From Haliotis rufescens (Eukaryota), in contig NW_025964223.1 in assembly GCF_023055435.1 (NCBI RefSeq), positions 60,388,001 to 60,452,000 of the forward strand: a stretch of DNA of 64,000 bases, in the 5' to 3' direction. The translations under genes and the position numbers were made by a program. Position 1 is the stretch's first letter. Each line of letters begins with the position of its first letter. Below, piece by piece: positions 22,299-40,148 of the stretch. Under the pieces are notes generated by a model. It did no database searches. It had not been told where the DNA came from and worked only from the letters and a program-made list of their open reading frames with translations.

Positions 22299-24845
22299 TT
22301 TCAACACTGGATCTCTCTGCACAGTTTGTGTTGTTTATGCATGTCTATTTCACTTGGTTGAGGTTTCTTTCTACATATTGCTGAATGTTTCAAATGATAC
22401 CAGATCACTCTCTCAGCCTCAAGATTGTGTCTCCAGATGTTGTGTGTTGACCCCTTTTATCGAAGGTCGACCGTCACCGTGTTTTGTTGTACATTCTTCA
22501 GTTTGTCATTTGATCACCTCATATTACCTGCTTGTAATTGTGGCTGGCATCCTTCCGTGTCATTATATCACACTATGAATGCCTCCTTGACATTCCCCAG
22601 TTATTCACACCCAAAAGGGTGAAACCTGTTTCAGGCAAAACAATCGCATCCTGATGGACCCGGGTTAGAATAACTCCCTCGCACACGAATGCATGCGTGA
22701 TACTTTTGCTCATCATGTCGACCATCGGTTTATCTGGCCCAGGCTCAGGTATTTACAGAGCGGCGTGATATTGCTTTAACATTGCTGAATGCGGCATTTA
22801 ACAAAATTCGTAGAATAGGTCTTCAGCAACTAATGCCTGCCGTGAAAGGCGAATATGCTTGTCGAATAAGAGGCGACTAACGGGATCGGGTGGTCAGCCT
22901 CGCTGACTTGGTTGATGCATGTCAACGTATCTCAATTGCGTGGATCGACGCTCATGATGTCAATCACTGGATGGTCATTCGATGGTGATACATTTAATAT
23001 TGCAGTGTTTTAGCTACTGTTTACAGCCTAACAACATTTTGATAGCTTTATCAATTTTATGGTCAAATCTAATTTTCAGGTGAAAACTTTCTTTTGCCTG
23101 GCAGTTTATACTAATTGTATTATATATTCGTCATTGTGGAGGTACACTGAACTATGTACAGTTACTCTATACTTTAACAGCAGCGTCCCATGTAGGCATT
23201 ACTTTGCTTGGAGCCGTTTTAAACCGTTTGTTGTTTAACGCGGCACTCAGCAATATTCCAGCTATGTGACGGCAGTCTGTAAATGATCGCGTCTGGATCA
23301 GACAATCCATTGATTGACATCATGAGCATCGATCTCAACAATTGGGATACAATTATATGCGTCAGCATTGTCAGCGAGCCTGGCCACCCGATCCGTTAGT
23401 CGCCTCTCATGAAAAGCATGGATTGCTAGCATATCCTTCACGGGTACATTTGCTGGGAGTCATGACCATGCAGCTTGTCGACAGGGGCATATGGAATATT
23501 TGAAATAAACAGTACAGTGAAGCTGTGTAACTATCCAGTGGCCCGAGGCTGTGTGGCGAGATGGGCTTGTGACCTCACATGAAATGGACAGTCGACGACT
23601 AGTTTAATATAACGATGAAAGGGACATCCTTCTTACGTCAGGAATACTCGCGGAGGCTGATTGGGGTGTTTTTGTGTCGACCCCCAAATGAGGGTCACAA
23701 TTTGAAAAGTTACAAACTGGCAGTTGTTTTGTTATGACCACTGGCAGAGATACATATTCAGGTTTTTATTATTCATGAAGATTGTTTATTCACATTAATT
23801 TATTGGTCGCAACCTTCCCCTGATAACCAGGCCCAAGAACAAGGTATCACCTAGGCTGCAAACGAGATCAATATAATCTCATTTCCACGCTATCCGATCG
23901 CTGAATTCCGTCACCAATTCGGCTACCGTAGCTTTGGTGACGAATTATCACGATATAAATAGTGTAATTTTATGTATGCTTCTTTCAGCATTCATATGTG
24001 AACTCAAAACGTGATGTGTAGTCGATCGGCGACCATACTCAACTGATCAAGACATTTCTAAATAGTGTAGCGCATGTTCCTGCACGTTATTTTCAACCTT
24101 GCAACAAGTCAACTAATTAACAAGTCCTGCAGTTACCTACATCATCTTAAATGTTCTCCATGAATATCATTTAAACAGTTCGGAAATTGTCCTTCCCGTC
24201 ATCGCCTTCAGCCAAGATCATGTTGAAACACACCGAACAAGTAAACCTTGGACTCATGTTGGACGCCACTCTGCAAACACTAGCTATGATAGAGCCTGTA
24301 AAGGTCTTGATAAAGGAGCCACCGTATTCGCCTCTTACGAAAACAAATTAAGGTCACTTTCATATTCCAAGAAATCGTATTTGCCCTTCCCACACTATTT
24401 TGAAATAAATCATGTTGGGAACAAATACTTTGCCTTCATCTCTCGAAGAGATTCAGCAGCATCAATGTTCATGGAATGTTCAGAATACCCAAGTTGAAAA
24501 ACATGGTGTGGTGCAAGCAAGTGAATGGCTTATGCAGCAGTCTTCAACATAAGCTACACATTACAAGAACATGAAATGATCTTTGATCAATACTACTGGT
24601 AGATTTCAGGAGCCACGCTCCGGCATCAGGGTACTTATGATAACATGTTCAGAGGGATTGTTGGACTATTGGTAACCTATTCCTTGATTGTTTGTTTAAT
24701 GCCAGCTAAATAATGTTGGCCTGTATATAATCCCTGTCTGGACCAGACAATGCAGTGCTTGATATTGTAAACAATGATTCACGTTGTCAAAGTACGATGA
24801 CCTGCTATCAACCAAGTGACCTTACCACCTGATCCATTTGGTCGC

Positions 24846-25490
24846 TCAAAGACCAGCATAGGTTGCTGGGAACATGTTCAAAGACCAGCATAGGTTGCTG
24901 GGAATATGTTCAAAGACCAGCATAGGTTGCTGGGAACATGTTCAAAGACCAGCATAGGTTGCTGGGAACATGCTCAAAGACCAGCATAGGTTGCTGGGAA
25001 CATGCTCAAAGACCAGCATAGGTTGCTGGGAACATGTTCAAAGACCAGCATAGGTTGCTGGGAACATGCTCAAAGACCAGCATAGGTTGCTGGGAACACG
25101 CTCAAAGACCAGCATAGGTTGCTGGGAACACGCTCAAAGACCAGCATAGGTTGCTGGGAATATGTTCAAAGACCAGCATAGGTTGCTGGGAACATGTTCA
25201 AAGACCAGCATAGGTTGCTGGGAACATGTTCAAAGACCAGCATAGGTTGCTGGGAACATGCTCAAAGACCAGCATAGGTTGCTGGGAACATGCTCAAAGA
25301 CCAGCATAGGTTGCTGGGAACATGTTCAGAGACCAGCATAGGTTGCTGGGAACATGCTCAAAGACCAGCATAGGTTGCTGGGAACATGCTCAAAGACCAG
25401 CATAGGTTGCTAGGAACATGCTCAAAGACCAGCATAGGTTGCTGGGAACATGTTCAAAGACCAGCATAGGTTGCTGGGAACATGTTCAAA
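24846..25490. repeat. 32-bp minisatellite x~20 derived from a family 2 SINE segment
   Basis: Unit TCAAAGACCAGCATAGGTTGCTGGGAACATG(T/C). Confidence 0.95.
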
Positions 25491-25639
25491 CCCCATGGCG
25501 TTTGTCAAGTTTCCACATAGAAGAGTATTGAAGACATGAATATTGTTATGTCCAGTTTAATTTGTATCGTCTGAAATTAGTGTCGAATAACAAAAACATG
25601 AACATTCCCCACAGAAATTTATTTCTCTTTTTACATGTC

Positions 25640-28410
25640 TCACTGGTACCCAAAGCTCTCGATAAGTTGCTGCTCTTTCTTGACTCTGGGCAGGACATTT
25701 TTCTTGGCTTGTTCTCTGAGACGCTGTAACACAAACAGAGAACTTATCAAACCTGTCTGGTCTGCAACAACTCTGGCAGCTGACCACAATGGAAAGCTCT
25801 ACATCACATCTGATTAAGGCAGGGGGCACTGTAGCTCAAAAACTATATCTGCCAATATCTATGGGTTTTACAGGTTAAGAAATGCATCAACAGTCCCGAA
25901 AGTTCTGGTGTATTTTATTCAAAATGAAAGAATTATCTGACAATTTTCACAATGCAATATTTATTTGTCTCTTAAATTTGCTTTTTGTCTGCAAAAGAAG
26001 CTTATAACTATGTGACTAATGTTACAAAATAAAGGGTCACAGCTACAGTGATAGAACAAAGGGACACTATTTATCTACACATAATTTTGAACTAAAAATC
26101 TAAGTGCACTGATAAACTAAATGCTTATTTAGTACACCCGTCCCTGTCAGTCTCAGCTGGTAGTGCATGTTGCTATTTTCATCAATATCAATACCAGGTT
26201 TTTTTATCATCACTGACCGACAGGATCAACTTCGGATGTGGTACACATGAGTAACGAAACAACCAAGAGCTACAGATAAGCAGCATAGTTGCGTAAAATA
26301 CCCCGCCAAAATAATCAAAACCCAATTACTTTCAATTAACTCGCGTACAGATACAAATGCATTACATGACAAACTCAAATTATAAAAACAGCATCCGTAA
26401 ATACCCAAAGAAAAAGCTTTTTCAGCATGTGAACAAAGGAGCTAATTTCGGGAAACACAATTACGAGCTAATTTACTTTCCAAGTCAAGCCAATATATTT
26501 AGAACCATTAAATACTCTTAAAACATTATTTCGGTTTTCTTAAATCTTAAAATGTTCACCAATTTTGGGAAATACACAAAAGAGTGATGAATAGATGAGT
26601 GAAAAAATATTGGTTACCCAATAAATAATGTTATAACCCAATTAAAATAGAAACCCTAGAGTAAAAACTCGATTGCTCAAAAAGTTATCTGGAGCTCTGC
26701 AACCTCAGCTCTTTAGTTCTTCTAGATCTTTACGAGTGTTTGGCATGTTAAAACCAGCAGACTGGACGCTATATCTGAACCTACTCTGCCACAGGATTCA
26801 ACACAGTATCAGTAACAAACTTTATGACCAAGGTTCTCTTCTCAAACATTAGGACCATAAATGCAAACTAAATTTCCCTCATGCCAATTAGTTTCCGCAA
26901 GATAAAGGCATGCTTCTTTACCTCTGTTCAATTTGAATTATGTTATGGACTTGGGCCTATTAACACTTAACAGAAGCAGCCAATCAATAAAAAGAAGAAT
27001 ACTCTATTGTTAAAGACTATTAATAAGATTGTAGACAAATTGTTTTCTTCAAAAGTTTGTAAAAAAATTTCAAACGGTTTCTTTCAAAACTATGAAAAGG
27101 TGTATTTCCAGGTCATTCAACTGAGATGGAGATTTTTGGAGACTTTTCAAGCCTGTCCAAAATGTGCTTAAGCGAAAATATAATTCTGATACTTGTCTTG
27201 CTCAAACCCACAATGATACATTCATTCTGATTAATAATCAGAAAAGTCACTCTGTGTGGGATCAAACCTGCCATCAGCAGATCCTGGTACAGTTACAATA
27301 GATAACTCTACTAAACTGGTGAGTTAGTTTGGTTTTGAGCCGCTTTTAGCAATATTCCAGCAATATCACGGCGGGGGACACCAGGAATGGGCTTCACACA
27401 TTGTACCCTTGTCAGGGATCGAACCCGGGTCTTCGGCGTGATGAGCAAACGCTTTAACCAGTAGGCTACCCGACCGCCCCTCTACTAAACTGTGACAACT
27501 TACAAGTGTTGACTTCCTCCTCTTGAAGTAATCATTTGATTTGACCTTCCTCTTTTCTTCAAGCTTGGCCACCACTCCCTGGTACATCCAGCCAACCTCC
27601 TTCGACAGGCGGTCCAGCTGACAGAACTGGAACACAACCACATCATCACCACGTGTCTTCACTGGCACGAGAACAGTGTCAAAAGCCTGTGCTTGTCTCA
27701 GATGGTAGTGCATGTAAAAGCTTTTTTCATCAGCTTCAAAACGCTATGGGATGAGTAAACATCACAGACAAGCTCACATAGAAACCATTACCTTAATGCA
27801 TCAGACTTTTGACAAGGATGAAAAATGAGGTGACAAGCTAATCAGGGATGCATACACCTTGAATTATTGCTAATTACTTCACGAACTATATTTTAGGAGA
27901 GAGTAGTCCCTCAATCTTTGCTGGGGGACTTCATAACCTGTTAATGATAGGGATATTTACCATCAGCAATATCCCAGCTGTATCGCAGAGCACAGTTATT
28001 GTTTTTGGTCTGGATCAGGTAAACCAATGAAGATCAAAATCATGGCAGGGGACACCAGAAATGGGCTCCACACATTGTACTCATGTGAGAAATCAAACCC
28101 AGATTTTCGGTGTGACGAGCAAACACTTTAACCACTAGGCTACCCACCGCCCCTCTTAACAAGTGAGGATTACAGAAGGCACCAATGTCTTACCCTGCTT
28201 GTGGGCTTCAGGCGGAGCACTTTGAGAGCAGAGGGAACAACCTGCCTCTTCATCTTGTCATAGGGTCCGGGGATCCCCTCAAACATCTTCAGCTTCCTGA
28301 GGGCAGCTTTGCCACGAGGCTGCTTGTGGGGGAGCATACCTGCAAGACAACACGTCGGTCAGTGAGGGGCAGGCAGTGGTTACTGGAGTGAACCTGGTTG
28401 GGAGGGGTGA

Positions 28411-28449
<39 letters not shown>

Positions 28450-31400
28450 CTTCAGTCATGGGACCATGACTAACTGGTTGGTTGTTTAATGCCCCACACA
28501 GCAATATTCCAGCTATATTAATCGAGTCTGGACCAGACAATCCAGTGATTGACATAAGCATCGATCCACCAAATTGGGATCGATGATATGCATCATCAAA
28601 GTCAGAGTGACCACCCAATCCTGTCAGTTGCCTCTTACGACAAGTATAGTCGCCTTTTACAGCAAGCATGGGTTGCTGAAGACCTATTCTAACCCGGATC
28701 TTCACGGGCCGAGTGATCTTAGTAATAAGCTGTCTCAGATGGTAGTGCATGTGAAGTGGTTTCATCAACTTCAAAACGCTATGGGATGGTATAAACATCA
28801 CTGACAAGCTTCAAGTTTATAACAGACATCACTGAATACATAGTAATCAGCATGGGACCCTGTTTTGTTTTGTAGGAACATGGTTGCTGGTAAACAAGAT
28901 TACCATCAAAGTCAGGGCTAGAAATAATGTACTTTCTCAAAAGTCAACCTTTACAGAATCAGCACTGGTTACATTTGATCAACTAAGTTTGACACTTATT
29001 TTGCTTTGATTCATTCAGCACGTAATTTGACTTGCAAACGACTTCTAATTTTGATTGCCTATATAGACCTCTGTCTACCTAACGTCTATGAAGTGCCTAC
29101 TCGTACTTCAACCACACAGGGTCTACCTTGGCAATACATTATAAATGGCACCACTGAGGACAATGTGACAACAGTTTTCGGGTTTGGTACAGGCATGTTT
29201 TACAGGGGTGTTCAATAGCTGTCTCAGATGGTAGTGCATGTGAAGTGGTTTCATCAACTTCAAAACGCTATGGGATGGTATAAACATCACTGACAAGCTA
29301 TATATCTAAACAATGACAGCACAAAGGAAATAAAGAAATAAATACTGATAATTCAGTTACCTCAACCTGTGAAAACTCAGTATTTCAAACAATCTATAAA
29401 GGGTCTCAAGGAGCTATTTAGATAATAGACTAAAGAGGATTGTGAGCGAGATACCCAAACACTGAATAGCTTCAAATAATGACAGTGGCAGTAGCAGCCA
29501 TTACAGGGGTGTTTAACAGCTGTCTCAGATGGTAGTGCATGTGAAGTGGTTTCATCAACTTCAAAACGCTATGGGATGGTATAAACATCACTGACAAGCT
29601 GTATTTTCACAACGACAATTAGTTTGATTAATACCCCAACAGCATCACCTGCTTAAGTTCACAACAGACATCCCTGAACATTGGTGAATGCTCTCCCCTG
29701 TGGGACACATTTCCAACATGATTTCTGGTGAGCACAAGACAAACCTCCAAAATCAGCTGAGTTTGACATTTACCCTTGGTTTCAATGTGTGCATGACACA
29801 ACCTATTCTTTATTTTCAATCATTATCTAAAACTCTGATATTGGAAAATGACTTTAATACATAGTGATTGAAAGTAAGAGGGGGCCTCAAGATCTATGGT
29901 ATTTTAATCTAGTGACCCCTGACATTCATGCTTATTTCGAACACTGTACATAAATATTCAGGTAAAATTTACTTGTACATATATATTCAGGTAAAATTTA
30001 CTAGTGCATATATTTTTCACTCTTTATCTAACTAGTTTCTTCTATGTTGAATCTGATATCTACCTTACTGTCTTAATGTGCATACAGCTTTAAATATTAA
30101 TGATTCATACTGTGACATTTATAATTTGACCTGGAAACTACTTCAATTCTGACTGATTAATGTAGCCTTCAGCTACTATTACCTCAAACCTAGGAAATGT
30201 CTACATGTTCTTCATTTGTTTTATGCCGAAGTCTGCAATATTGCAGCCATATCACAAAATGCCAAAAATAATCAAGTCTGGATCAGACAAAATAGTGATT
30301 AGTATAAGAGCAACATCATGTCCTCAGATCAGAATGACACAATCAACCCAAGGCGTCAAGACGACAGACCACCTGTCTAAACTTATATCGCCTCTTACAA
30401 AAAGCAACAGAGAAGATAATTAGGTGAAAGATTAAAGATATCAACACCGAGACATGACAATAGTGGCACAAGCGTGTGCTTATGGGGGTGGGGGTTGTTC
30501 ATGGCGATTGTTCTATATAGCTGTCTCAGATGGTAGTGCATGTGAAGTGGTTTCATCAACTTCAAAACGCTATGGGATGGTATAAACATCATTGACAAGC
30601 TATATATGTAAATAATGACATCACCTTATAAGAAATGAAGAAAAAGAAATAGCATTAACTCATCTATATGTCCAAAGCAGGGGAGGAATGCTCAGCAGTT
30701 TCTATCAGAAAAAGAATATTTTCACAAGTATTCAATGTAGGTAAGGATAATCATCACATAGAAACTGCTCTGTTCATAAGATGGATCACACTCAGACAAA
30801 CTCTTACTAAACTCTATTCTCATTCTACAGACACAACTTTGAACATCTGACATTAAATGATTTCACATACCAGGATAAGACTTGAAGTAACCAGTCTTAA
30901 ATGGAAAGAAAAGAACATTTAGGAACCATTCCTATGAGAACTTAAAGTATGATTACATTTTCCTATCTTACAAATTAAATTCTTTATTCAACGCAAATTA
31001 CTTGCATCTTAATCACTAACTTCACAATGAAGATGGTCACTGAATTGATTAACATCCTTATTTTAATGACTCGTTGACTTCATTTCCTCAGTTTTGTGTT
31101 TGTCTTCAGGTTTCGGACAATGTAGGTAAAGTCATCACTGGAAATGATAAGATGGTAGTAGAAATATAAATTACAATTAGTCACCACTTTAGACTTCCAT
31201 ATTCTAAGGTTTGTTTCTATTTACTTCTAGAATCCTGTGAGACTGTCGTCTCATCCCTGCAAAACAGTGTGTGATGAGATATGATCATGATTCTTTGAAA
31301 GTGACATACACCTCAGACCTGTCATCAAATCCTACAAATAAAGCGCCCATAATACCATAGAAAATTAACCTTGTTCAAGTTTGGTTGTACCATTTCTCCT

Positions 31401-34400
31401 TCAGATACCTTAACCTCTGACACAATGTGACAACTCCATTCTGACTGCCTCATTAAACCTCCGGCCACCCTAAAGTCACACCTAGGAAATGCCTACTCAT
31501 AACTTAACCCTTGGGGTCCACCAAGACAATACACTAAAGGCAAACATAGCACAATATGACAACAGTTTAAGTGTGTTGTACAGATAGGTTTTTTGGGGGT
31601 GTTCTATAGCTGTCTCAGATGGTAGTGCATGTGAAGTGGTTTCATCAACTTCAAAACGCTATGGGATGGTATAAACATCATTGACAAGCTATATATCTAA
31701 ACAATGACAGCACCTTCTAAGAAACAAAGAAATATCAATAATTCAAATACCTCAGTGTTCCCGTTTACCGTTAATTTCACATTTTTAACCAGCAAAATTA
31801 GGCTTGGACTGGTAATTCATGTGACTACCAGTCCCTGTGGACCGGCAAAGTATCTCATAAATCTTTGTTGTTGAACAAGACGTCAGCGATATTCATATAG
31901 GTAAGTATATTTTTCGAAACGAAGCCTGCTTGTCTGTTAGTTAACTATCAGGATTTCTCCTTTTCTGTTTTTAGTGCAATGACATAACATTTCAGTTGTT
32001 TCGAGGTTAAATATATATTTGTAGCAACTTAGTCTCAAAACATTTGAAAATCAGAAAATTGTGACTGAACTTTGTGTGAATGATGTGTAGATCGAACTAA
32101 GTTACTCCAGAGATGTCGTCATTGCACTGAACATGATGTTGGAAGAATTAAAACCAGATTATTTCTATACATTTTTTTAATTGTTAAAAATTGGGACTGA
32201 CAAAAATGGGGGGAGAGAGAGGGAGAGGGAGAAGGAAGAACTGTTAAATTTTTACTGGCAGTTTCAAAAGCCAGTGGGAACACTGTCAACCTGTGAAACA
32301 ATGTGAAAGCACAGTGTTATAAACAATCTATAAGGGGTCACAAGGAGCTATTTAGGGAATACACTGAAGATACCGAAACACTGAATAGCTTCAAATAATG
32401 ACAGTGGCAGTAGCGGCCGTTACAGGGATGTTCAATAGCTGTCTCAGATGGTAGTGCATGTGAAGTGGTTTCATCAACTTCAAAACGCTATGGGATGGTA
32501 TAAACATCACTGACAAGCTATATATTTACCCAATGACAATTAGATTTGCAGCATCACCTGCTAAGAAGACACTTCATCAATAGAGGGTTGTAAATTTAAC
32601 AGTCGGGATGCAAAATGCCAGTAATTTATAGAGTTCTGTAGCTGCCTACTTAGACAAACCCATCTAAAAGTCCTTCAAATTATGACTTCTGGACATGCAA
32701 CTTAACAGCCACAGCATTGCCCATGAGCAAATGTTTCAATTACAAACACCATGGCTGGATTTTCTAGTAAACACAAGACTGAACTGTCAAGATGTGTCAT
32801 CACAATTTGATAGGACGTCTATTTTTAGCATGTCAATAAAAGAATGGATCCAGAGTATATATATATCATATTAGAATTGAGATATGATACACTGGATAAT
32901 TGAGAATAGAGGTCCAGATAGACATACTGGAAGTAGATATTTTAACAAGGTTTAGTTGATCAGCAGTTTCTATCAGAATAAGAATATTTTCACAAGTATT
33001 CAATGTAGGTAAGGATAATCATCATTTAGAAACTGCTGTTTGTTATATGTAACACAATGAGACACTGCAACAAAAACTTCTCAACAATGCCCATACTCTT
33101 TTCTTCAAATGTAACGGATAATTGAATGATACTTATGTGCACAATAGATCCATATCAAAGTTAAAGAATTTGGTCAAATTTCCTAAAACCTAACTTAAAA
33201 GAATCATTATTTAAATTGCAAGACCCAGTAATGAAAAACTACAAGCATTATCAAGCACAATATTTTTTTGAATGAAACAATGTTAACCTGTTAACCACCA
33301 GGAGAGACAACTGTCATGTATTTCAAATTTTTAAAACACTATTCATGGCTTGATGTTAGGATCTTGATTTAACTTACTTGCACCAAGTGCATGTTGACAA
33401 ACAACCTTGTTGCACCAGAAAAAACAGGTTGCCCCCTGGTCCAAGAAAACTATCAAATAATCCTGAAGTACCTGCAGTTTGATGTCAAGCCCCAAAAGCA
33501 TGACAAGTTACACATAACAGGGATTATTAACGTAGGAAAAGAAGGTTTAGAGGTATAAAATGTGTTCAGAGAGACAAATATTAGGTTGCACTGGTGCATA
33601 TTTTATATAGCTAAATCAAGCCCGGCTATCTGTAATTTCAAATACTTCCTACACAATTGAGGTAAGCTTATCTTAAATCCACACAGATATCTAGTTCATA
33701 TCATCGTATTGCATACCTATTTGTTAGCTACTAACCTACTATAGAAGAATGCACAAAGATGGCCAGTGAGTGGATCAAATGTCCTTTAAATAATGTCATT
33801 TCCTCAGTTTTGTGTTTGTCTTCAGGTTTCAGACAATGTAGGTAAAGTCATCACTGGAAATGACGTAGTAGTAGTAGTAGTAGTAGTAGCAGTAGTAGTA
33901 GTAGTAGTAAGATATATTACAAGTTAGACAATTCTTCAACACTTCGTTTATGGGAGGATTCTGCTCATTTAAATCTTACATAAAAATATATTTGGAACAA
34001 TGCCTGCAAATGAATCATTTAAGCCATGGTTTCAGTTGAGCACGTAAATGTTTAATGGTACCTCGGACAGTCCTCCAGAAGATCATCCTGGGAGCCCGGA
34101 AGTGGAATGGGCCGCGAGCAGGGTTCACGTTGCATCGCTTCTTTAGGAAGTCCAGGTACTTCACTGTAAACATACAGGTCAATCAGGGTAAGAACGGGTC
34201 AGTATCACTATTACACCACTATGATATATCCATAAACGTATACAATGGTATTTATAAGTACATGTGTAATATTTACATAGATTCCATCATGGATTCAGCA
34301 GAATTTTAAAACACACAATAGTTTGTCTAAAAATCTAAGCAAAAATTCTTTGAAAGCTTATTGCATTCATATTGTAATATACAACTTAACATTTGCTAAG

Positions 34401-36420
34401 GGCCAAAATAGGCTCCAAAATAGTGTGGTCCTCAGAAAATGTTTAGTCTTTTATCAATGTAATATTCATATGACATACACTTGAACAAAATATGTTAATT
34501 ATAACAAAGGTACTGCCATTAAAACAGCAATATACCACATGCATTCCAGATGCAACTTGAAAATCACTAAATTCAAGAACTTGTGTTTATAACAAGGATG
34601 TTAGTGAAATGGACACTATTACAGCAACGTCATTATTACAACAAATTGGATCAAAAACTTACATTTGTTTCTGTAGAAGTTGCCAGATATGCAGATACCT
34701 TCACATCTTACAATAACAACTCGCTGACCTGGAAAAAACATGTTAATAAATTTAATACTCTATCCATCCAACGTTTGACAAGTGATTTTTGTGTGGTGCT
34801 GGTTCGGTTTCAGTCTGACAACTGAAAATTCTACATTAGTTTGTTCTAATGAAGTATGCTACTATAAACATTTTTATGCATTTTCTAGTTTATGAAAGTA
34901 TATTTCTCTAATGCAATACCAGGGCAATAGGCATAGCACTAATATCAAAAAATGAAAATATATTCACTCTTTCAATAAAATAAACAACTTCAATGAAGAA
35001 TTTCTATACTGAATAATCACATTTCCTCAGGTCATAGGTGTCGTCATGGTTTCAGACAATGTAGGTAAAGTCATCACTGGATGGGATATTCAGTTTTGTA
35101 TACCATACAACTTCTGTCAGCGTTAAATATCAAGATTGTTGTAGGTCACAGTTATGAAAATAGCAGCAGAGATGTAAAAAAAGTTAAATGACTTGACCGC
35201 TTGTCGAACTGATGAATATTTACCTTGTAGTAGTGTCTTGGCAACAATTGAGGCCAGACGCCCGAGCAGATGCCCTCGGGCATCAATCAAAATGGGCTGA
35301 AAGCAAAACAATCAACCATCAGTTTCATTACCACAATATTAATAAAAGTGCATGAGGTGTATTGGTCATAATCTAGTGGCATGGACAAATCTTTCAGGTT
35401 TGGGGACTTCAACTTGAATTATTTTTTTAAAAAAGACACAAGTTTGTAATCAAATTAATGTTATCAAATAGTTGACCACTAAATATGATTCATGTTCATA
35501 CAGCCCTACAGGTAAAAACAAGACCCATTATGACTTCCACTACTCTATGACCATATAAAAATTAAGGTATCCTGAGTGCCAACATTATCATTCAGGCAAA
35601 TAAATGCTTCAGTTGAAGCTGCATCAATGTTGGTAAAAATTCACTTTGAATTAAAAAATAAACATATGTTGTGATAAGTGATGAAAAATGAGGTTTGAGC
35701 ATTAATATACTCACAAAAAATGTTTGGGATCATTAATATTTTATGGGAATTTGTTTTATGAAATTTTGAACTGTTTCACTACAAAAAAATATCCCCAAAA
35801 GTATTCAGGATACAAATAAAGAGCGATAAATATAAAGCTTGAGGTTAAGACATCCATTCAAATAGACTTTATGTTCCTGTTTTGCAAGGATTTCTCGAAC
35901 ATCTTGTTCGCTCAAAGGTGAAGATTTCAGCAGTACATATGGTAAACGGATTCTGCTACAGATAACTGCTATGACCGATAGGTATGGGATGTCTTATAAC
36001 ATGTCCAGCTGAAATAGCACAAGTTACCTCTCCTTTATAAACTGAGGCATCTCATTTGTGAAACGTATTCGGACATTCACATTAACCCTTCATCAAAGCT
36101 AACTGACGAAAAGGTGATCTGATTTATACACTTTCTGTGTGATACACACTTTGGGAAGAAATATTGCTCTTCTATTCCTGACAAAACCATTTTATGTGTA
36201 AAACACACTCATATCATTCTGTATCTTAAATACACGTGGGTTAGAATGCCTTTCACCGAGCATTACACGTAAGACGGAGCTTTCATATTAACATATTGCA
36301 CTAGAGCAGATCATAATGTTGATTTGCTGTGTACGGGACAACTTTTCTCGGTTCCTTTGGCTTCCAAACTGACAAAAATGGTAGCACACTGCCGTCATAT
36401 ACCTTGTTCTGAAAACCCAT
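25640..36420 (-). CDS. RPL13A: 60S ribosomal protein L13a (uL13), 203 aa; exons 36420..36403, 35296..35224, 34728..34663, 34163..34062, 28339..28194, 27626..27504, 25723..25640
   Basis: Translation [77 protein letters not shown]...GMLPHK...[10 protein letters not shown]...IESFGYQ*; 612 nt in frame; AATAAA just 3' of the stop (25618-25623). Confidence 0.97.
26143..26224 (-). ncRNA. SNORD33: Box C/D snoRNA, SNORD33 (U33)-type, divergent copy in RPL13A intron 6
   Basis: Minus strand: C GTGATGA, D' TTGA, C' TTGATGA, guide ACATGCACTACCA, D CTGA, terminal stem CCTGTC/GACAGG. Confidence 0.8.
26266..26700. mobile_element. MITE (~430 bp), same family as 44081..44512 in opposite orientation
   Basis: TIR AGAGCT.CAGATAA/TTATCTG.AGCTCT; the interior is the reverse complement of 44081..44512. 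Confidence 0.75.
27319..27480 (-). mobile_element. tRNA-derived SINE, family 1 (further copies at ~28044-28153, ~39513-39678, ~59850-60003)
   Basis: Same consensus; TSD CTCTACTAAACTG. Confidence 0.88.
27691..27773 (-). ncRNA. SNORD33: Box C/D snoRNA, SNORD33-type, RPL13A intron 5
   Basis: C GTGATGT, guide ACATGCACTACCAT-CTGA, stem GCTTGTCT/AGACAAGC; ends ~65 nt upstream of the acceptor, the usual position for intronic C/D snoRNAs. Confidence 0.87.
28728..28810 (-). ncRNA. SNORD33: Box C/D snoRNA, SNORD33-type, RPL13A intron 4 copy 6
   Basis: 83-nt unit AGCTTGTCA-GTGATGT...TTGA..TTGATGA...CACATGCACTACCAT-CTGA-GACAGCT; the 3' guide matches recalled vertebrate U33 and pairs with 18S UGGUGGUGCAUG. 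Confidence 0.88.
29217..29299 (-). ncRNA. SNORD33: Box C/D snoRNA, SNORD33-type, intron 4 copy 5
   Basis: Identical 83-nt unit. Confidence 0.88.
29518..29600 (-). ncRNA. SNORD33: Box C/D snoRNA, SNORD33-type, intron 4 copy 4
   Basis: Identical 83-nt unit. Confidence 0.88.
30519..30601 (-). ncRNA. SNORD33: Box C/D snoRNA, SNORD33-type, intron 4 copy 3
   Basis: Same unit with C box ATGATGT (change at the R position only). Confidence 0.88.
30694..30769 (-). ncRNA. Box C/D snoRNA, U34-related variant with guide CCTTACCTACA(TTGA)
   Basis: 11-bp terminal stem AGCAGTTTCTA/TAGAAACTGCT, C GTGATGA, D CTGA, and a 28S-complementary tract. Confidence 0.78.
31080..31147 (-). ncRNA. SNORD34: Box C/D snoRNA, SNORD34 (U34)-type, intron 4
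   Basis: Stem TCATTTCC/GGAAATGA, C GTGATGA, guide TTACCTACATTGT complementary to 28S ACAAUGUAGGUAA, D' CCGA, D CTGA. Confidence 0.85.
31608..31690 (-). ncRNA. SNORD33: Box C/D snoRNA, SNORD33-type, intron 4 copy 2
   Basis: Same unit with C box ATGATGT. Confidence 0.88.
31753..32285. mobile_element. TIR element inserted in a snoRNA spacer
   Basis: TIR CAGTGTTCCC/GGGAACACTG; the empty-site homolog is at 29350-29380; no clear TSD. Confidence 0.65.
32437..32519 (-). ncRNA. SNORD33: Box C/D snoRNA, SNORD33-type, intron 4 copy 1
   Basis: Identical 83-nt unit. Confidence 0.88.
32961..33038 (-). ncRNA. Box C/D snoRNA, U34-related variant, second copy
   Basis: Near-identical to 30694..30769; C ATGATGA; 12-bp stem. 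Confidence 0.78.
33795..33864 (-). ncRNA. SNORD34: Box C/D snoRNA, SNORD34-type, intron 4
   Basis: Near-identical to 31080..31147, with D' CTGA. Confidence 0.86.
33865..33909. repeat. (GTA)n microsatellite abutting a SNORD34 copy
   Basis: Seen directly. Confidence 0.9.
35021..35083 (-). ncRNA. SNORD34: Box C/D snoRNA, SNORD34-type, RPL13A intron 2
   Basis: C GTGATGA, guide TTACCTACATTGT-CTGA, C' ATGACGA, D CTGA; the 3' half has diverged from the intron 4 copies. Confidence 0.83.
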
Positions 36421-36480
36421 GATGGCTAAAAGGCCGAGTTAGGGGGTTACACGTGGTTTTCCAGGGACAAAACGGAAGTT
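36421..36480 (-). promoter_or_regulatory. RPL13A 5' UTR/promoter with a TCT/5'TOP-like pyrimidine tract and an ETS-like site
   Basis: Minus strand CTCGGCCTTTTAGCCATC-ATG; CGGAAGT at 36473-36479. Both are typical of ribosomal protein gene promoters. Confidence 0.5.
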
Positions 36481-36995
36481 GACTGGGGCCTTGTCTACTA
36501 AAATGTGTAAAAGCGGTGCGCTTGCGTTGCGTACCAACAGTGGAACCAGTTTAAAACGGAAAGAAAATCAAAGGGAGGCTATCCGCATTCAGTGTCTAGG
36601 AAACCCGCTCGAACTTAATAACGTATCACCATGACCTGCATATTGACACTTTTTGTTTTATTCTTTCTAAAAGAAAGAAATAGCAAAACTTAAATGGGAC
36701 AATGAAATATATAGACAGCCAACATTCATGTTTGCCAGGAAATAAATGGTCTTCATTATTTAATTCCCGTGAAGATTCCGGGCTAGAATTGGTTTTCAGC
36801 AAGAGAGCAAAAGGCGACTAGCGGGATCGGGTGGTCAGGCTTGCTGACTTGGCTGATTCATGTCATCGTATCCAATTTGCGTAGATCGATGTTCATGGTG
36901 TCAATCACTGGATTGTCTGTTCGAGACTCGATTATTTACCGACCGCCGTCATATAGCTGGAATATTGCTGAGTGCGGCGTAAACAACAAACAAAC

Positions 36996-37417
36996 TAGGG
37001 CTGGGACGTGTCCAAATTTACTACCCGGGTACCCCCCTCCCTATTACCCGACCCTACCCGGGTACCCGCTGTAGATATCTAGAGATAAGTACAAACTGTC
37101 AGATTTGGAAAAGTTTGACCGTAGCCCTGGCAAAATGTATTTAGATACACGTGTAAAACAATCTGGTCATGCACACACTGAAGTTTACTGCGTGTAGTTT
37201 TACCTTTATTTAGACATAAAAAAGTCAGAAGGAATGGGTGCATAGTCAGAAAGAAATAGGAGCGCTAGTGACTTATAGTGTAACCACAGTGTTTTAGATA
37301 AAAAAAAAGTTCCTCAAACAATATATCACTTGACTAACCACGGGTCCGGGTATAGTCCTGTGGGTACCCGGGTCCTATTCAGGACCCACCCGACCCGAGT
37401 TACCCGTCCGAGCACTA
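36996..37417. mobile_element. hAT-like MITE inserted in a SINE tail
   Basis: Imperfect TIR TAGGGCTGGGACG/CGTCCGAGCACTA, 8-bp TSD AAACAAAC, subterminal ACCCG repeats. Confidence 0.75.
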
Positions 37418-37929
37418 AAACAAACGTATGCAAATCTACGCATGTTGCATGGTCGAATTATTACAGGTTTATTCTGGAAGAAGGTCACCAATCTTCAGTT
37501 TCTGTTATAAGTCATCCGGACATGTCCCGTCCAGTGGGTGACAGAGTCTGAACGAACCACACGGAGTTCTTAGTAAAAACAAACAACCCATATAGCTAGC
37601 CAAATCGGACACAGATAAATGTTCTTTTTGGTCGAATACTTAAATTAACAAACTTTCATTGATCTGTATGTGAAATTTGCTTATCGATCCGATATTTGTT
37701 ACGTAGACAAGAAAAGCGCATTTACCTAGCAATTGCTATAATATATCAAGATCAGTAAGATAAAATAACGGCCAAAAACATTTTACCATAGTTTTTATTA
37801 ACTCTAGTTTAGATAGATGCATCAAGTAAAAAGTATTGAAAAGATTAAAACCTCAACGAAATCAACAGCTATACAACATCCGTTATTGGTATGACAGTTG
37901 CCCTAATTGAGATGGGATAGCATCTGAAG

Positions 37930-38655
37930 TTCTGAAGGCTGGGACAGGTTTCATCTGGACAGCTCTGATGGGCGTGCAAGGGTTTACATGCGTACACGAG
38001 TATGTTTTAGCGACGCATGTGTTCCTCAGGGGCGTCAGTTTGGGGGTGGAATGGTAATGGTATGGGGCGGCATCACAACTCATGGGAGAACACAACCCAT
38101 CATTGTAAATAACAGTTTGAATGGGGTACGCTACAGGGACGACATCGTTGACATCATGCTCTACCCGTTGTGCAAATTCTGGGACATAGCTCACGTTGCA
38201 GTAGTATAATGCCCATGGGCGGATACAGAGAGGGGGGTGGGTGGGGGTGCGCGCAACCCCCTTTTTTATTTCGAAAAAAATCTTTATTTCTGTATAGATT
38301 ACCACCAAAGAAAATAAATAGATCTTAATTGTGCACCCCACCTTTTCAAAAAGCTGTATCCGCCCATAATGCCCCACCCACATGTTGCACGTTTTGTAAA
38401 GGACTTTTGTCACAACATAACATTGCTGTACCTCATGGCCGGCTGTTTCTCCAGACCTCTCCCCCATGTAACATGTCTGGGATGAGATGGGTTGATGTCT
38501 ACGACAGGACCAGAACCAGCCCCTAACACTAGCTCTGTTGGGCCAATCTTGGAATTTGGCACATCATCCAGGCCGTTTTCAATCTCTGGTGTCTTCAGTG
38601 ACCCCAGCTGCCTCGCACCTATCAACGCAAATGGTGGCCATACACGATATTGACA
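37930..38655 (+). mobile_element. Decayed Tc1/mariner transposase remnant
   Basis: SSDGR.RVY, GGGMVMVWGGIT..GRT, SLNGVRYRDDI, SPDLSP..HVWDEMG, ANGGHTRY* across frameshifts. Confidence 0.85.
38215..38367. mobile_element. MITE nested in the Tc1 remnant
   Basis: TIR ATGGGCGGATACAG/CTGTATCCGCCCAT; flanking duplication AATGCCC. Confidence 0.8.
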
Positions 38656-40148
38656 TTGTTAATTGAGTTAGTTACACCGCCCCTCTTTTAGGGCGTCTCG
38701 CTCTGTCAATGAATTTGTTGTAATCAAACATTGATCAGACGAATGACCAAATATTATGATTTCAATCACTTGATTGTCAGGGCCAGACTCGATTATTTAC
38801 AGACCTCCATGATGTAGGTGGAATGCTGCTTAGTGCAACAAACAAGTCATATGAAGCCTAGTTACTTTTCCCGCTAGTACAGATTTACAATAGTTGCAGA
38901 ACTAAGTTCGCGTTGTGCTTGTGAGACCTGGGGCCAAAGGTCACGAGATAGAAAAGACTAAGAATACATGTAGTTTGTCATTAGACATCCTCTAAAGGTT
39001 GGGATACATTTGTCATTAACTTGGTTAATATCTCCTGTTTTGAAAAGTTGTAGATAAATCAAAGGTCAAGGTCAGCATTCTGTTTATTGTACTGAATCTT
39101 GTTGTTTACGTTTTTTTTTAACAAATCTGACCGTATAACAGGTCAGCCGCAGTTTTTATACTAAAGGTCAAGGTCACCTGAGTTAATTGTGAAATGCAGT
39201 CGTAATATTCTTCCTCTTGAATACAACGCAAATAATATTGGCATTAGAGGATTTATGCAATGGACTTATTCTTCATGAACCTGTGTGATTGTTTTGCCAC
39301 ATTTTGATAAGGTCAAGGTCATGAGATAGAAACATTTCACTCACACCTTTGTGGTTACTCTTTCTAAAGAAAATAGCTAACACAAACATCTCAAAACATA
39401 TGGTGCTATCACTATGCTGTTGTTTTCTGGTCACATTCCAAACATACCTAGTCTAATGTGAGCCCTTGTAATTGTGACAAGGTACAAGGGTGGTAAGTCA
39501 AACCAAACCCTCAGTGAGTAAGTGAGTGATTTTACGCCACTTTTATCAATATTCCAGGAATATCATGGTGGGGGGACACCAGGAATAGGCTTCAACATTG
39601 TACCCATGTTGGGAATCGAACCCAGGTCTTTGGTGTGACGAACCAATGCTTTAACCACAAGGCTACCCGACCGCCCCCAAAACCTCAGTAGTTGATATTG
39701 GCAGTATAGACTCTTGTACATTAATTAACTTCATCCACATCAAATTGCAGTTCCTCTCAGGTGATCCTCTATAAAATATATGAAAACACTCAAGCCCTTG
39801 TGACCACCAATAATATTCACCCAAGGTTCTTCTCCGTCTCGCCAATTCCTCTGACCCTCCAACAGTGGACAGTACCAATTGCCTCCTTTCTGCAGCCTGA
39901 ACCTCCCAAGACTGCCCCCTTCTTCTTCATTTTTTATTTCTACTCAGAACAGCTTTCTTATTAAATAAGCTTCTTGGTTATTCTCCAGGTATTTCCTCTT
40001 CATCTAGCTGCTGCTGCACATGCCCCTTATTCATCACACTGCAGGGCAGTTATCTCTCTCAACATGAAGGAGCAATGGGGTAGCCCAGTGGTTAACGTAT
40101 CTGCTTGTCACACTGGGTTCGATTCCCAACATGGGTACAATGTGTGAT

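What the first reader, a model, noticed from the sequence alone, without database searches (positions are those of the whole stretch)
28340..34061. Ten box C/D snoRNAs packed in one RPL13A intron: an amplified intronic snoRNA array
Seen: in transcription order, intron 4 holds U34, variant, U33, U33, U34, variant, U33, U33, U33, U33, and three more copies sit in introns 2, 5 and 6 (13 in total). The six 83-nt U33 copies differ at one position, while their spacers are visibly diverged and have collected insertions. Known: vertebrate RPL13A hosts SNORD32-35 at one snoRNA per intron, because exonucleolytic trimming of a debranched lariat yields a single snoRNA. Inference: host synteny is deeply conserved here, but the copies look selected or homogenised. 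If most are expressed, they need endonucleolytic polycistronic processing or hidden splicing between units.
Basis: partly seen in the sequence, partly recalled or inferred. Interest (0 to 1): 0.9.

Follow-up and report, generated by a model that had tools for sequence, protein, structure and literature searches.

The report
Ten-snoRNA array in one RPL13A intron
One 5.7-kb intron of the ribosomal protein gene RPL13A really does carry ten methylation-guide snoRNA genes whose cores are kept almost identical while the DNA between them has decayed. At least four or five of them are made, so this animal breaks the usual "one snoRNA per intron" rule in a way so far described mainly in flies and plants.

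Summary
On the minus strand lies a seven-exon RPL13A/uL13 gene, and intron 4 is 34061-28340, 5,722 nt.

**What the gene holds**
- Rfam places 13 box C/D snoRNAs in it, ten of them in intron 4.
- In transcription order these are U34, a U34 variant, U33, U33, U34, the variant, then four U33.
- The six U33 units share an 83-nt core that differs at one base.
- Their flanks are only 72-78% alike, or cannot be aligned at all.
- Guides match the genome's own rRNA: 18S U1306, 28S U2149, 28S G2153 and possibly 28S C1338.

**Evidence the array is real and used**
- Contigs from independent DNA runs and from a sister taxon cover every unique spacer, so this is not an assembly artefact.
- Small-RNA reads on the gene strand start 3-4 nt before box C of units 1, 2 and 6, and reads also lie on unit 5.
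- The intron-2 snoRNA is also read. U33 reads are few.
- Internal units are therefore processed.

**Mechanism**
The route is unproven. I favour snoRNP assembly on the terminal stems, then cuts in the spacers and exonuclease trimming.

A rival is recursive splicing. Copies of the intron-4 acceptor (AG|GT) lie upstream of four U33 units.

**Context**
- A metagenome contig holds an independent array of at least six U33 units in another RPL13A intron.
- Unchecked notes from this scan report other multi-snoRNA introns elsewhere in this genome.

Verdict: a new variant of a known kind.

The parts
25640..36420 (-). RPL13A/uL13 host gene. Exons: e1 36420-36403, e2 35296-35224, e3 34728-34663, e4 34163-34062, e5 28339-28194, e6 27626-27504, e7 25723-25640 (includes the stop).
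   Evidence: All introns are GT..AG and the frame runs 203 codons without a stop. The exon-5 peptide matches residues 87-133 of 60S L13a/uL13 chains at E 5e-17. Exon 2 hits Pfam Ribosomal_L13 weakly. An RNA contig shows the e4-e5 junction.
28340..34061 (-). Intron 4, 5,722 nt, carrying the ten-unit array.
33797..33862 (-). Unit 1 (a): U34/SNORD34. The D' guide points to 28S U2149. It lies 199 nt from the donor site.
   Evidence: 38.5 bits against a gathering score of 38. Guide match. Small-RNA reads begin at 33856: 138 reads, of which 78 belong to the intron-2 copy.
32966..33033 (-). Unit 2 (b): U34-derived variant with D' box UUGA. Its guide is shifted 4 nt and points to 28S G2153. It has an 11-bp terminal stem.
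   Evidence: 31.8 bits, below the gathering score. Guide match. 292 reads begin at 33028.
32438..32517 (-). Unit 3 (c): U33/SNORD33. The 83-nt core is 32437-32519.
   Evidence: 54.5 bits. Core identity. The D guide points to 18S U1306 and the D' guide to 28S C1338.
31609..31688 (-). Unit 4 (d): U33, with A instead of G before box C.
   Evidence: 52.8 bits.
31081..31146 (-). Unit 5 (e): U34 with D' box CCGA instead of CUGA.
   Evidence: 34.6 bits, below the gathering score. Differs from unit 1 at one base. Small-RNA depth is 10.8 in its bin.
30698..30765 (-). Unit 6 (f): U34-derived variant.
   Evidence: 31.1 bits. 59 reads begin at 30760. Its 5' end differs from unit 2 at two bases, so the two are told apart.
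30520..30599 (-). Unit 7 (g): U33, A variant, with a 12-13 bp extended stem.
29519..29598 (-). Unit 8 (h): U33. The outer stem pair is C-G.
29218..29297 (-). Unit 9 (i): U33.
28729..28808 (-). Unit 10 (j): U33. The outer stem pair is A-U. It lies 389 nt from the acceptor site. Its flanks share only a short upstream GTGATGTC-type element with the other units.
35020..35083 (-). Intron-2 U34-like snoRNA. It has the same D' guide as U34 but a different 3' half.
   Evidence: 30.6 bits. 78 reads carry its private 17-nt continuation, which is found only at 35047.
27692..27772 (-). Intron-5 U33-like snoRNA with the same two guides. It lies 65 nt from the acceptor site, the canonical position.
   Evidence: 53 bits.
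26147..26220 (-). Intron-6 U33-like snoRNA with the same 18S guide and a different D' guide.
   Evidence: 48.7 bits.
32550..32575 (-). Copy of the intron-4 acceptor plus the first bases of exon 5 (..CTTAGCAG|GTGATGCT). It lies 41 nt upstream of U33 unit 3.
   Evidence: Local alignment to the true junction scores 25, against a null 99th percentile of 25 that includes this site itself. Listed as a Yn-AG|GT site.
29641..29666 (-). Same acceptor copy upstream of U33 unit 8.
   Evidence: Score 22.
31700..31735 (-). Pyrimidine tract followed by AAG|GTGCTG, 26 nt upstream of unit 4. This is a recursive-splice-site-like motif.
30611..30646 (-). Pyrimidine tract (18 of 20) followed by AAG|GTGATG. It lies 73 nt after unit 6 and 26 nt before unit 7.

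Best explanation
Intron 4 of RPL13A is an old, tandemly amplified array of ten functional box C/D snoRNA genes. There are two U34, two register-shifted U34 derivatives and six U33.

All are transcribed as part of the RPL13A pre-mRNA. Each unit keeps C, D', C' and D boxes, rRNA-complementary guides and an 8-13 bp terminal stem that reaches beyond the mature ends.

I propose the following route. The stems let the core snoRNP proteins assemble on each unit wherever it sits in the intron; this is the stem-dependent, splicing-position-independent mode. The excised intron, or the pre-mRNA, is then opened by endonucleolytic cuts in the spacers. 5'-3' and 3'-5' exonucleases trim to the protected snoRNP ends, as in plant and fly intronic clusters and yeast polycistrons.

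The 83-nt U33 cores are kept identical by gene conversion and/or dosage selection, while the spacers drift and collect transposons.

- Shown: the array, its reality in other individuals and a sister taxon, guide-target matches, core-versus-flank contrast, and defined 5' ends for several internal units.
- Inferred: the assembly mode, the endonuclease step, the conversion, and actual methylation.
For: - Covariance-model hits for all 13 units.
- Guides pair with the genome's own rRNA with the fifth-nucleotide rule giving 18S U1306, 28S U2149 and 28S G2153 at 10-11 Watson-Crick pairs, and 28S C1338 at 9. The sequence around U1306 (UGGUGGUGCAUGG) fits the site that U33 is reported to guide, Um1326 in human (PMC3511168). 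I did not align the two rRNAs.
- The 83-nt cores are identical while flanks are 72-78% alike or unalignable.
- The intron-5 paralogue differs at about 14 non-guide positions. Those positions can change, yet they are identical among the six.
- The terminal stem pairs in 91.7% of cells. One pair is U-A in four copies, C-G in one and A-U in one. Sliding the partner drops pairing to 15-52%.
- Stems of 8-13 bp are found in the 11 units the script handled. For the two variant units it anchored on the wrong D box, and I read their 11-bp stem by eye.
- Only the intron-5 unit lies at the canonical 65 nt from an acceptor. The expressed intron-2 unit lies at 291 nt, so position-independent processing exists in this species.
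- Small-RNA reads on the gene strand start sharply at 33856, 33028 and 30760, that is 3-4 nt before UGAUGA of units 1, 2 and 6. There is also depth on unit 5.
- Single-copy-depth DNA contigs from another study and from organism B abut the snoRNA cores on every spacer.
- An independent 168-nt tandem array of at least six SNORD33-like units sits in another RPL13A intron on metagenome contig L074.
Against: - U33 units are barely seen in the one small-RNA library: depth 0.5-1 in two bins and none in the others. Size fractionation against an RNA of about 80 nt may explain this, but low output is equally possible.
- No endonuclease site or processing intermediate was observed.
- The compensatory evidence rests on one base pair. 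28 of 500 shuffles reach the observed score.
- No methylation data exist.
- Gene conversion and selection cannot be separated.
Confidence: 0.6

Rival explanations
1. Hidden recursive or nested splicing. The 5.7-kb intron is removed stepwise at internal Yn-AG|GT sites. Several of these are duplicated copies of the true intron-4 acceptor plus the GT-initial start of exon 5. Each lariat would then carry one or a few snoRNAs, and the ordinary debranch-and-trim route would suffice.
For: - Upstream of U33 units 3 and 8 lies a near-copy of the real intron-4/exon-5 junction, with 22 of 24 aligned bases identical in the unit-3 copy.
- Units 4 and 7 have a pyrimidine tract followed by AAG|GTG(C/A)TG.
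- AG|GT sites lie 61, 73 and 91 nt after units 1, 6 and 9, near the canonical snoRNA-to-acceptor distance.
- Zero- and one-base-exon recursive splicing processes snoRNA clusters in Candida and relatives, including the U33 homologue snR55 (PMC5033589).
Against: - Yn-AG|GT sites are not enriched in the intron: 11 observed against 7.6 +/- 2.8 in Markov-1 simulations, P = 0.14.
- The motif is lost upstream of units 9 and 10.
- The shared motif may be plain inheritance between paralogous units.
- The GTGATG could be a degenerate box C remnant.
- The donor halves are weak, matching 2-5 of 6 positions of GTRAGT.
- Among the listed joints of the RNA run only exon 4 to exon 5 appears. However, 385 rows were not shown, and contigs rarely keep intermediates.
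Confidence: 0.2
2. Only a minority of units are productive. Most U33 copies are silent passengers of unequal crossing-over, kept alike by gene conversion. Alternatively the intron mainly yields snoRNA-capped long RNAs (sno-lncRNAs) rather than ten monomers.
For: - Very few U33 reads.
- Two snoRNAs in one intron are known to give sno-lncRNAs (PMC11028025).
- RNA contigs cover the spacers at depth 5-30, against 145-326 for the flanking exon bins.
- Unit 5 carries a D' box change.
Against: - The sharp edges of the identical core coincide with the terminal stem.
- The outer stem pair is compensated in two units.
- Boxes and guides are intact in all ten units.
- Both variant copies, and U34 units 1 and probably 5, are expressed as separate RNAs with defined 5' ends.
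- Reads were placed on both the G-type (unit 3) and the A-type (unit 4) U33 copies (weak, few reads).
Confidence: 0.15
3. Assembly artefact. The array would be a collapsed or expanded repeat that does not exist as written.
For: Identical 83-nt cores are hard for assemblers.
Against: - Eight runs from four studies hold 61-77% of the sampled words.
- Contigs at single-copy depth (9-21) from X1 span every unique spacer except the one between units 8 and 9, which contigs of X12 and X13 span. Each contig ends in or within about 10 nt of a snoRNA core or at a repeat.
- X12 and X13 (organism B) show the same spacers with 3-6% differences.
- The spliced RNA skips exactly 5,722 nt.
Confidence: 0.02

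Closest known systems
Vertebrate RPL13A locus hosting SNORD32A, SNORD33, SNORD34 and SNORD35A (U32-U35)
   Same: The host gene (uL13) is the same, and so are the snoRNA families (SNORD33 clan, SNORD34). The 18S target context is that of the reported human site Um1326 (PMC3511168). Papers on the Rpl13a snoRNAs are listed.
   Different: Vertebrates have one snoRNA per intron and four in all. Here there are 13, ten of them in intron 4. The intron-by-family assignment differs. No clear U35 is seen. A U34 derivative with a 4-nt register shift is added.
Intronic snoRNA gene clusters of Drosophila melanogaster and rice
   Same: Several snoRNA isoforms lie in tandem inside one host-gene intron, which implies processing of a polycistronic intronic precursor. 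This is stated in PMC3089462, which cites Huang 2004/2005 and Liang 2002, and in PMC11028025.
   Different: The fly clusters are described there mainly for H/ACA snoRNAs. This is a box C/D array of ten units in a ribosomal protein gene of another, undetermined animal taxon. It has decayed kilobase spacers and homogenised cores. I could not read the primary fly and rice papers.
Fungal snoRNA polycistrons spliced by nested or recursive splicing (Candida, Debaryomyces, Neurospora; the snR57-snR55-snR61 cluster)
   Same: Many snoRNAs lie on one transcript, including the U33 homologue snR55. Zero- or one-base exons keep one snoRNA per intron (PMC5033589). AG|GT sites between the units here could work the same way.
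   Different: The fungal hosts are non-coding. Recursive use of the sites here is untested, and they are not statistically enriched.
Mammalian sno-lncRNAs (two snoRNAs in one intron)
   Same: More than one snoRNA in one intron blocks exonucleases from both ends (PMC11028025).
   Different: Here monomer-like reads with defined 5' ends exist for internal units. Long capped species were not examined.
Metagenome contig L074 (Ga0224511_10189848)
   Same: It is an RPL13A gene with the same intron positions around the exon 4, 5 and 6 equivalents. It carries at least six SNORD33-like units with the identical 18S guide in one intron.
   Different: The array lies after the exon-6 equivalent, not in intron 4. 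The units form a tight 168-nt tandem repeat with 91% matches, so it is young or homogenised over the whole unit. The organism is unknown. The hits score 40.2-43.7 bits, just under the gathering score of 44.

Membership tests
Box C/D snoRNA, Rfam SNORD33/SNORD32/Z195 (RF00133) | Covariance-model score at or above the gathering score of 44 bits | tested here: met
   Eight hits at 48.7-54.5 bits: six in intron 4 and one each in introns 5 and 6.
Box C/D snoRNA, Rfam SNORD33/SNORD32/Z195 (RF00133) | C box (RUGAUGA-like) near the 5' end, D box (CUGA) near the 3' end, and a terminal stem | tested here: met
   GUGAUGU or AUGAUGU, plus CUGA, plus a 10-pair stem.
Box C/D snoRNA, Rfam SNORD33/SNORD32/Z195 (RF00133) | Guide upstream of box D pairs with 18S so that the fifth nucleotide faces the U homologous to human Um1326 | tested here: met
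   10 Watson-Crick pairs and 1 G-U pair over positions 2-12. The target is U1306 of the genome's own 18S, in the context UGGUGGUGCAUGG. Homology to human U1326 rests on PMC3511168 and sequence context. The two rRNAs were not aligned.
Box C/D snoRNA, Rfam SNORD33/SNORD32/Z195 (RF00133) | Accumulates as a stable RNA of about 80 nt | tested here: inconclusive
   Only about ten reads in a size-fractionated miRNA library with 50-nt reads.
Box C/D snoRNA, Rfam SNORD34 (RF00147) | Covariance-model score at or above the gathering score of 38 bits | tested here: inconclusive
   Unit 1 scores 38.5 and meets it. Unit 5 scores 34.6, the variants 31.8 and 31.1, and the intron-2 copy 30.6; these do not meet it.
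Box C/D snoRNA, Rfam SNORD34 (RF00147) | D' guide to the conserved 28S segment ACAAUGUAGGUAAGG, methylating the U | tested here: met
   11 Watson-Crick pairs; target U2149 of the genome's own 28S. The variant units use D' UUGA and target G2153 instead, so they are derivatives and not U34 proper.
Box C/D snoRNA, Rfam SNORD34 (RF00147) | Expressed with a defined 5' end | tested here: met
   Read starts at 33856, 33028 and 30760. The intron-2 copy is identified by its private 3' half.
Intronic snoRNA cluster (polycistronic intronic precursor) | Two or more snoRNA genes on the host strand within one spliced intron | tested here: met
   Ten units lie between the exon-4 donor and the exon-5 acceptor. 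The junction is seen in RNA.
Intronic snoRNA cluster (polycistronic intronic precursor) | More than one unit of the intron yields mature RNA | tested here: met
   Units 1, 2 and 6 have sharp read starts, told apart by private bases. Unit 5 has read depth only, and its start position was not among the listed rows.
Intronic snoRNA cluster (polycistronic intronic precursor) | Release by endonucleolytic cleavage between units | not testable with these tools
   Needs 5'-end mapping of intermediates or nuclease depletion.
Recursive splice sites | Pyrimidine tract followed by AG|GT that is used first as an acceptor and then as a donor | tested here: inconclusive
   The motif is present at 11 places, four of them just upstream of U33 units. 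It is not enriched (P = 0.14). No junction data were obtained.
Ribosomal protein uL13 / L13a host gene | Exons encode uL13 in one open frame | tested here: met
   The exon-5 peptide matches L13a residues 87-133 at E 5e-17. The frame runs 203 codons with no stops. The joined model was used only for this frame count inside a script and was not searched.

The most novel reading that the evidence does not exclude
Each round of tandem duplication copied the intron-4 acceptor together with the GT-initial first bases of exon 5. Every new snoRNA unit therefore arrived with a ready-made recursive splice site (Yn-AG|GT). On this reading the array is removed as a chain of sub-introns, one or a few snoRNAs per lariat. 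That would be a self-propagating way for an animal protein-coding gene to multiply intronic snoRNAs without breaking the one-per-lariat logic.
Probability: 0.15. Interest if true: 0.8.

Novelty: new variant of a known kind. Interest (0 to 1): 0.55.

Why it matters
In animals, intronic box C/D snoRNAs are thought to depend on one-per-intron placement about 70 nt from the acceptor. Here one gene contains, side by side:
- a canonical unit, 65 nt from an acceptor;
- expressed units hundreds of nucleotides away from one;
- a ten-unit array.

Together with the miRNA-seq data, this makes the question [quoted passage not shown] directly testable in one locus.

The contrast between identical cores and decayed spacers is also a clean case for measuring gene conversion against dosage selection in small RNA genes. 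The duplicated acceptor gives a concrete history of how the array grew.

A second, independent RPL13A array (L074) suggests a recurrent and under-described mode of snoRNA gene organisation in invertebrates. So do unchecked notes of other multi-snoRNA introns in this genome.

Tried and rejected
- **Assembly artefact.** Rejected from independent DNA and RNA contigs.
- **snoRNA retroposition for the isolated unit 10.** Rejected. The shared core extends past the expected mature ends into the stem, and no A-tail follows.
- **Global alignment of 150-nt flanks.** Uninformative, because random intron pairs give 76% identity over partial coverage. Replaced by blastn self-comparison.
- **Enrichment of AG|GT recursive-like sites.** Not significant.
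- **Pfam on single short exons.** Gave only weak hits, so host identity rests on the PDB sequence search.
- **L074 units.** They fall just under the Rfam gathering score.
- **Second guides of U34, the variants and the intron-2 and intron-6 copies.** No convincing rRNA target was found.
- **Huang et al. 2005 (fly clusters).** Not held in the paper library.
- Internal junctions beyond the 15 listed rows could not be inspected.

Full report
**Observation**

Rfam at gathering thresholds finds eight SNORD33 hits (48.7-54.5 bits) and one SNORD34 hit (38.5 bits) on the minus strand between 26147 and 33862. A permissive scan adds four SNORD34-like hits at 30.6-34.6 bits.

Reading the minus strand and mapping splice sites gives a seven-exon gene. 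All introns are GT..AG, and the frame runs 203 codons without a stop. I joined the exons only inside a script to count frame and stops.

The exon-5 peptide matches residues 87-133 of 60S ribosomal protein L13a/uL13 chains at E 5e-17. A contig of run X12 joins exon 4 to exon 5 across it (skips 5,722 nt, GT..AG on the gene strand, depth 475), which also shows that X12 is RNA.

In transcription order the intron holds U34, variant, U33, U33, U34, variant, U33, U33, U33, U33. Introns 2, 5 and 6 hold one unit each.

**Anatomy of the units**

All 13 units have a C box, a D box, internal D' and C' boxes and a terminal stem.

The six intron-4 U33 units are invariant over 83 nt, from AGCUUGUCA to GACAGCU, except for one G/A column just before box C. 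The identity stops abruptly at the edges of the terminal stem.

I tested the guides against the genome's own rRNA genes:

| Unit type | Guide | Predicted target (own numbering) | Pairing |
|---|---|---|---|
| U33 | box-D guide | 18S U1306 | 10 Watson-Crick + 1 G-U |
| U33 (also intron-5 copy) | D' guide | 28S C1338 | weaker, 9 + 2 |
| U34 | D' guide | 28S U2149 | 11 Watson-Crick |
| Variant | D' guide, using UUGA as D' | 28S G2153, four bases on | same 28S segment |

The context of U1306, UGGUGGUGCAUGG, fits the site reported for U33, Um1326 in human (PMC3511168). I did not align the two rRNAs. No target was found for the other second guides.

**Is the array real?**

Eight runs from four studies hold 61-77% of the sampled words of the interval.

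Contigs at single-copy depth (9-21) from DNA run X1 span each unique spacer. Each ends in or within about 10 nt of a snoRNA core or at a repeat, as expected when 31-mer assembly breaks at identical 83-nt repeats. The one spacer X1 misses, between units 8 and 9, is covered by X12 and X13.

X13, labelled as another organism (B), shows the same spacers with about 3-6% differences and small indels. The array therefore exists in other individuals and predates the split from a sister taxon.

SNORD33 hits were found at this locus alone in the 1.33-Gb genome. This is a lower bound, because only the best candidates are scored.

**Evolution**

blastn of the intron against itself finds homology beyond the cores only for some pairs:
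- unit 3 with unit 8: 260 nt at 85%;
- unit 4 with unit 9: 323 nt at 79%;
- unit 4 with unit 7: 143 nt at 92%.

Removing the identical core leaves flank identity of about 72-78% for the two longest pairs, by my own arithmetic. Unit 10 shares only the 83-nt core in that comparison.

The two U34 units share 68 nt at 98.5%. The two variants share 110 nt at 87%.

High-copy repeats fill 28400-28800, 30200-30400, 31600-32400 and 33400-33800 (depths).

The intron-5 paralogue keeps boxes and both guides but differs at about 14 other positions. Those positions are therefore free to change. Their identity in all six intron-4 copies points to homogenisation by gene conversion, possibly together with dosage selection, rather than to purifying selection alone.

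The outermost variable stem pair is U-A in four units, C-G in unit 8 and A-U in unit 10. Overall 91.7% of stem cells pair, against 15-52% when the partner is slid. Only 28 of 500 column shuffles reach the observed score. This is suggestive, not strong.

**A duplicated acceptor**

About 41-47 nt upstream of U33 units 3 and 8 lies a near-copy of the true intron-4/exon-5 junction. The copies read ..CTTAGCAG|GTGATGCT and TGTTGTGAACTTAAGCAG|GTGATGCT; the true junction reads TGTTGTCTTGCAG|GTATGCT. Their local scores are 25 and 22, against a null mean of 12.8 and a 99th percentile of 25 that includes the site itself.

Units 4 and 7 have a pyrimidine tract followed by AAG|GTG(C/A)TG at the same relative place. 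Units 9 and 10 have lost the AG|GT.

The simplest reading is that the duplication unit ran from about 45 nt upstream of U33 to a few bases into exon 5.

**Expression**

In a size-fractionated miRNA-seq run of the same species label (X21; raw reads, 50 nt), 546 reads fall on the interval, all on the gene strand.
- Molecules begin sharply at 33028 (292 reads, unit 2), 33856 (138 reads, unit 1) and 30760 (59 reads, unit 6). These starts lie 3-4 nt before UGAUGA.
- Units 2 and 6 differ at two of their first four bases, so both are expressed.
- 78 of the reads starting at 33856 continue with a 17-nt string found only at 35047. They come from the intron-2 copy and are at least 49 nt long.
- Unit 5 has depth 10.8 in its bin.
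- U33 units have only about ten reads, placed on unit 3 (G type) and unit 4 (A type). A library cut against RNAs of about 80 nt could explain this, but I cannot show it.

The best-seen units are the first, second, fifth and sixth.

**Mechanism**

Distances to the acceptor are 65 nt for the intron-5 unit, which is canonical. They are 291 nt for the expressed intron-2 unit, 423 nt for intron 6, and 389-5,457 nt for the array. This species therefore processes box C/D units far from a branch point, and all units carry 8-13 bp stems.

I favour stem-dependent snoRNP assembly on each unit, endonucleolytic entry in the spacers and exonucleolytic trimming. This is the logic described for polycistronic and splicing-independent snoRNAs (PMC10557570, PMC11028025). 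No intermediate was seen, so this is inference.

The rival is recursive or nested splicing at the AG|GT sites.
- It has a precedent in fungal snoRNA clusters that include the U33 homologue snR55 (PMC5033589).
- Sites lie 61, 73 and 91 nt after units 1, 6 and 9.
- However, such sites are not enriched: 11 observed against 7.6 +/- 2.8, P = 0.14.
- No internal junction was among the 15 listed joints; 385 rows were not shown.

**Comparison and novelty**

Reviews state a predominant one-snoRNA-per-intron rule in animals, acknowledge intronic clusters, and note that two snoRNAs in one intron give sno-lncRNAs (PMC11028025). Intronic clusters are described for Drosophila, mainly H/ACA, and for rice (PMC3089462). 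A full-text search brought up no paper on mollusc snoRNA organisation among the 15 listed.

I scanned metagenome contigs for the 17-nt U33 guide plus box D. This gave 120 loci, six of them with RPL13A exons.
- In three related contigs the guide sits in introns 2 and 4.
- In two contigs it sits in intron 2.
- L074 carries at least six SNORD33-like units (40.2-43.7 bits). They form a 168-nt tandem array with 91% matches, in the intron after the exon-6 equivalent, and the array runs off the contig.

Amplification of U33 inside RPL13A has thus happened at least twice.

Notes of this scan (unchecked) list other multi-snoRNA introns elsewhere in the same genome, in SF3B3, EPRS and others. They also give two parallel readings of this stretch: a second U33 guide, and a variant target 4 nt away. 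The scan has therefore seen this kind of thing before on other DNA of this genome.

I rate this a new variant of a known kind.

**Limits**
- The taxon was not determined.
- Methylation and processing intermediates were not observable.

Noticed in passing
window 32550-32575 and 29641-29666 (minus strand): Near-copies of the true intron-4 acceptor plus the first bases of exon 5 lie upstream of two U33 units. They show that the duplication unit reached into exon 5, and they leave AG|GT motifs inside the intron.
   Followed up: partly
L074:1-2019 (metagenome contig Ga0224511_10189848): This is an RPL13A fragment of an unknown organism with the same intron positions. It carries at least six SNORD33-like units in a 168-nt tandem array in the intron after the exon-6 equivalent, and the contig ends inside the array.
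   Followed up: partly
window 27692-32517 (U33-type units): A D' guide (CAUCCCAUAGCG followed by UUGA) is conserved between the intron-4 and intron-5 copies. It pairs with 28S 1334-1347 and predicts C1338. The same idea appears in scan note s1-816435, which calls it SNORD48-like. That equivalence was not tested here.
   Followed up: partly
window 31081-31146: The second U34 unit has CCGA instead of CUGA as its D' box. This is the only difference from the first unit within the Rfam hit.
   Followed up: no
window 24844-25490: A 32-nt minisatellite with 20 copies and 96% matches begins about 150 nt downstream of the RPL13A stop codon.
   Followed up: no
window 28035-28145 and 27361-27471 (introns 5 and 6); 28400-28800 (intron 4): tRNA-like, SINE-type repeats. 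The first two are 84% alike. The intron-4 one reaches word depths of 10^5 to 10^6 in DNA and RNA contigs, and it produced most of the spurious joints in the read table.
   Followed up: no
window 3506, 6156, 12595, 39601, 60109: Rfam tRNA hits sit only just above threshold (30-35 bits). ARAGORN finds no tRNA in 24000-40000, which covers the 39601 hit only; the other four were not scanned. They are probably SINE-borne tRNA-like heads and not genes.
   Followed up: partly
window 33865-33909: A (GTA)15 microsatellite, read as (TAC)n on the gene strand, abuts the 5' side of the first U34 unit.
   Followed up: no
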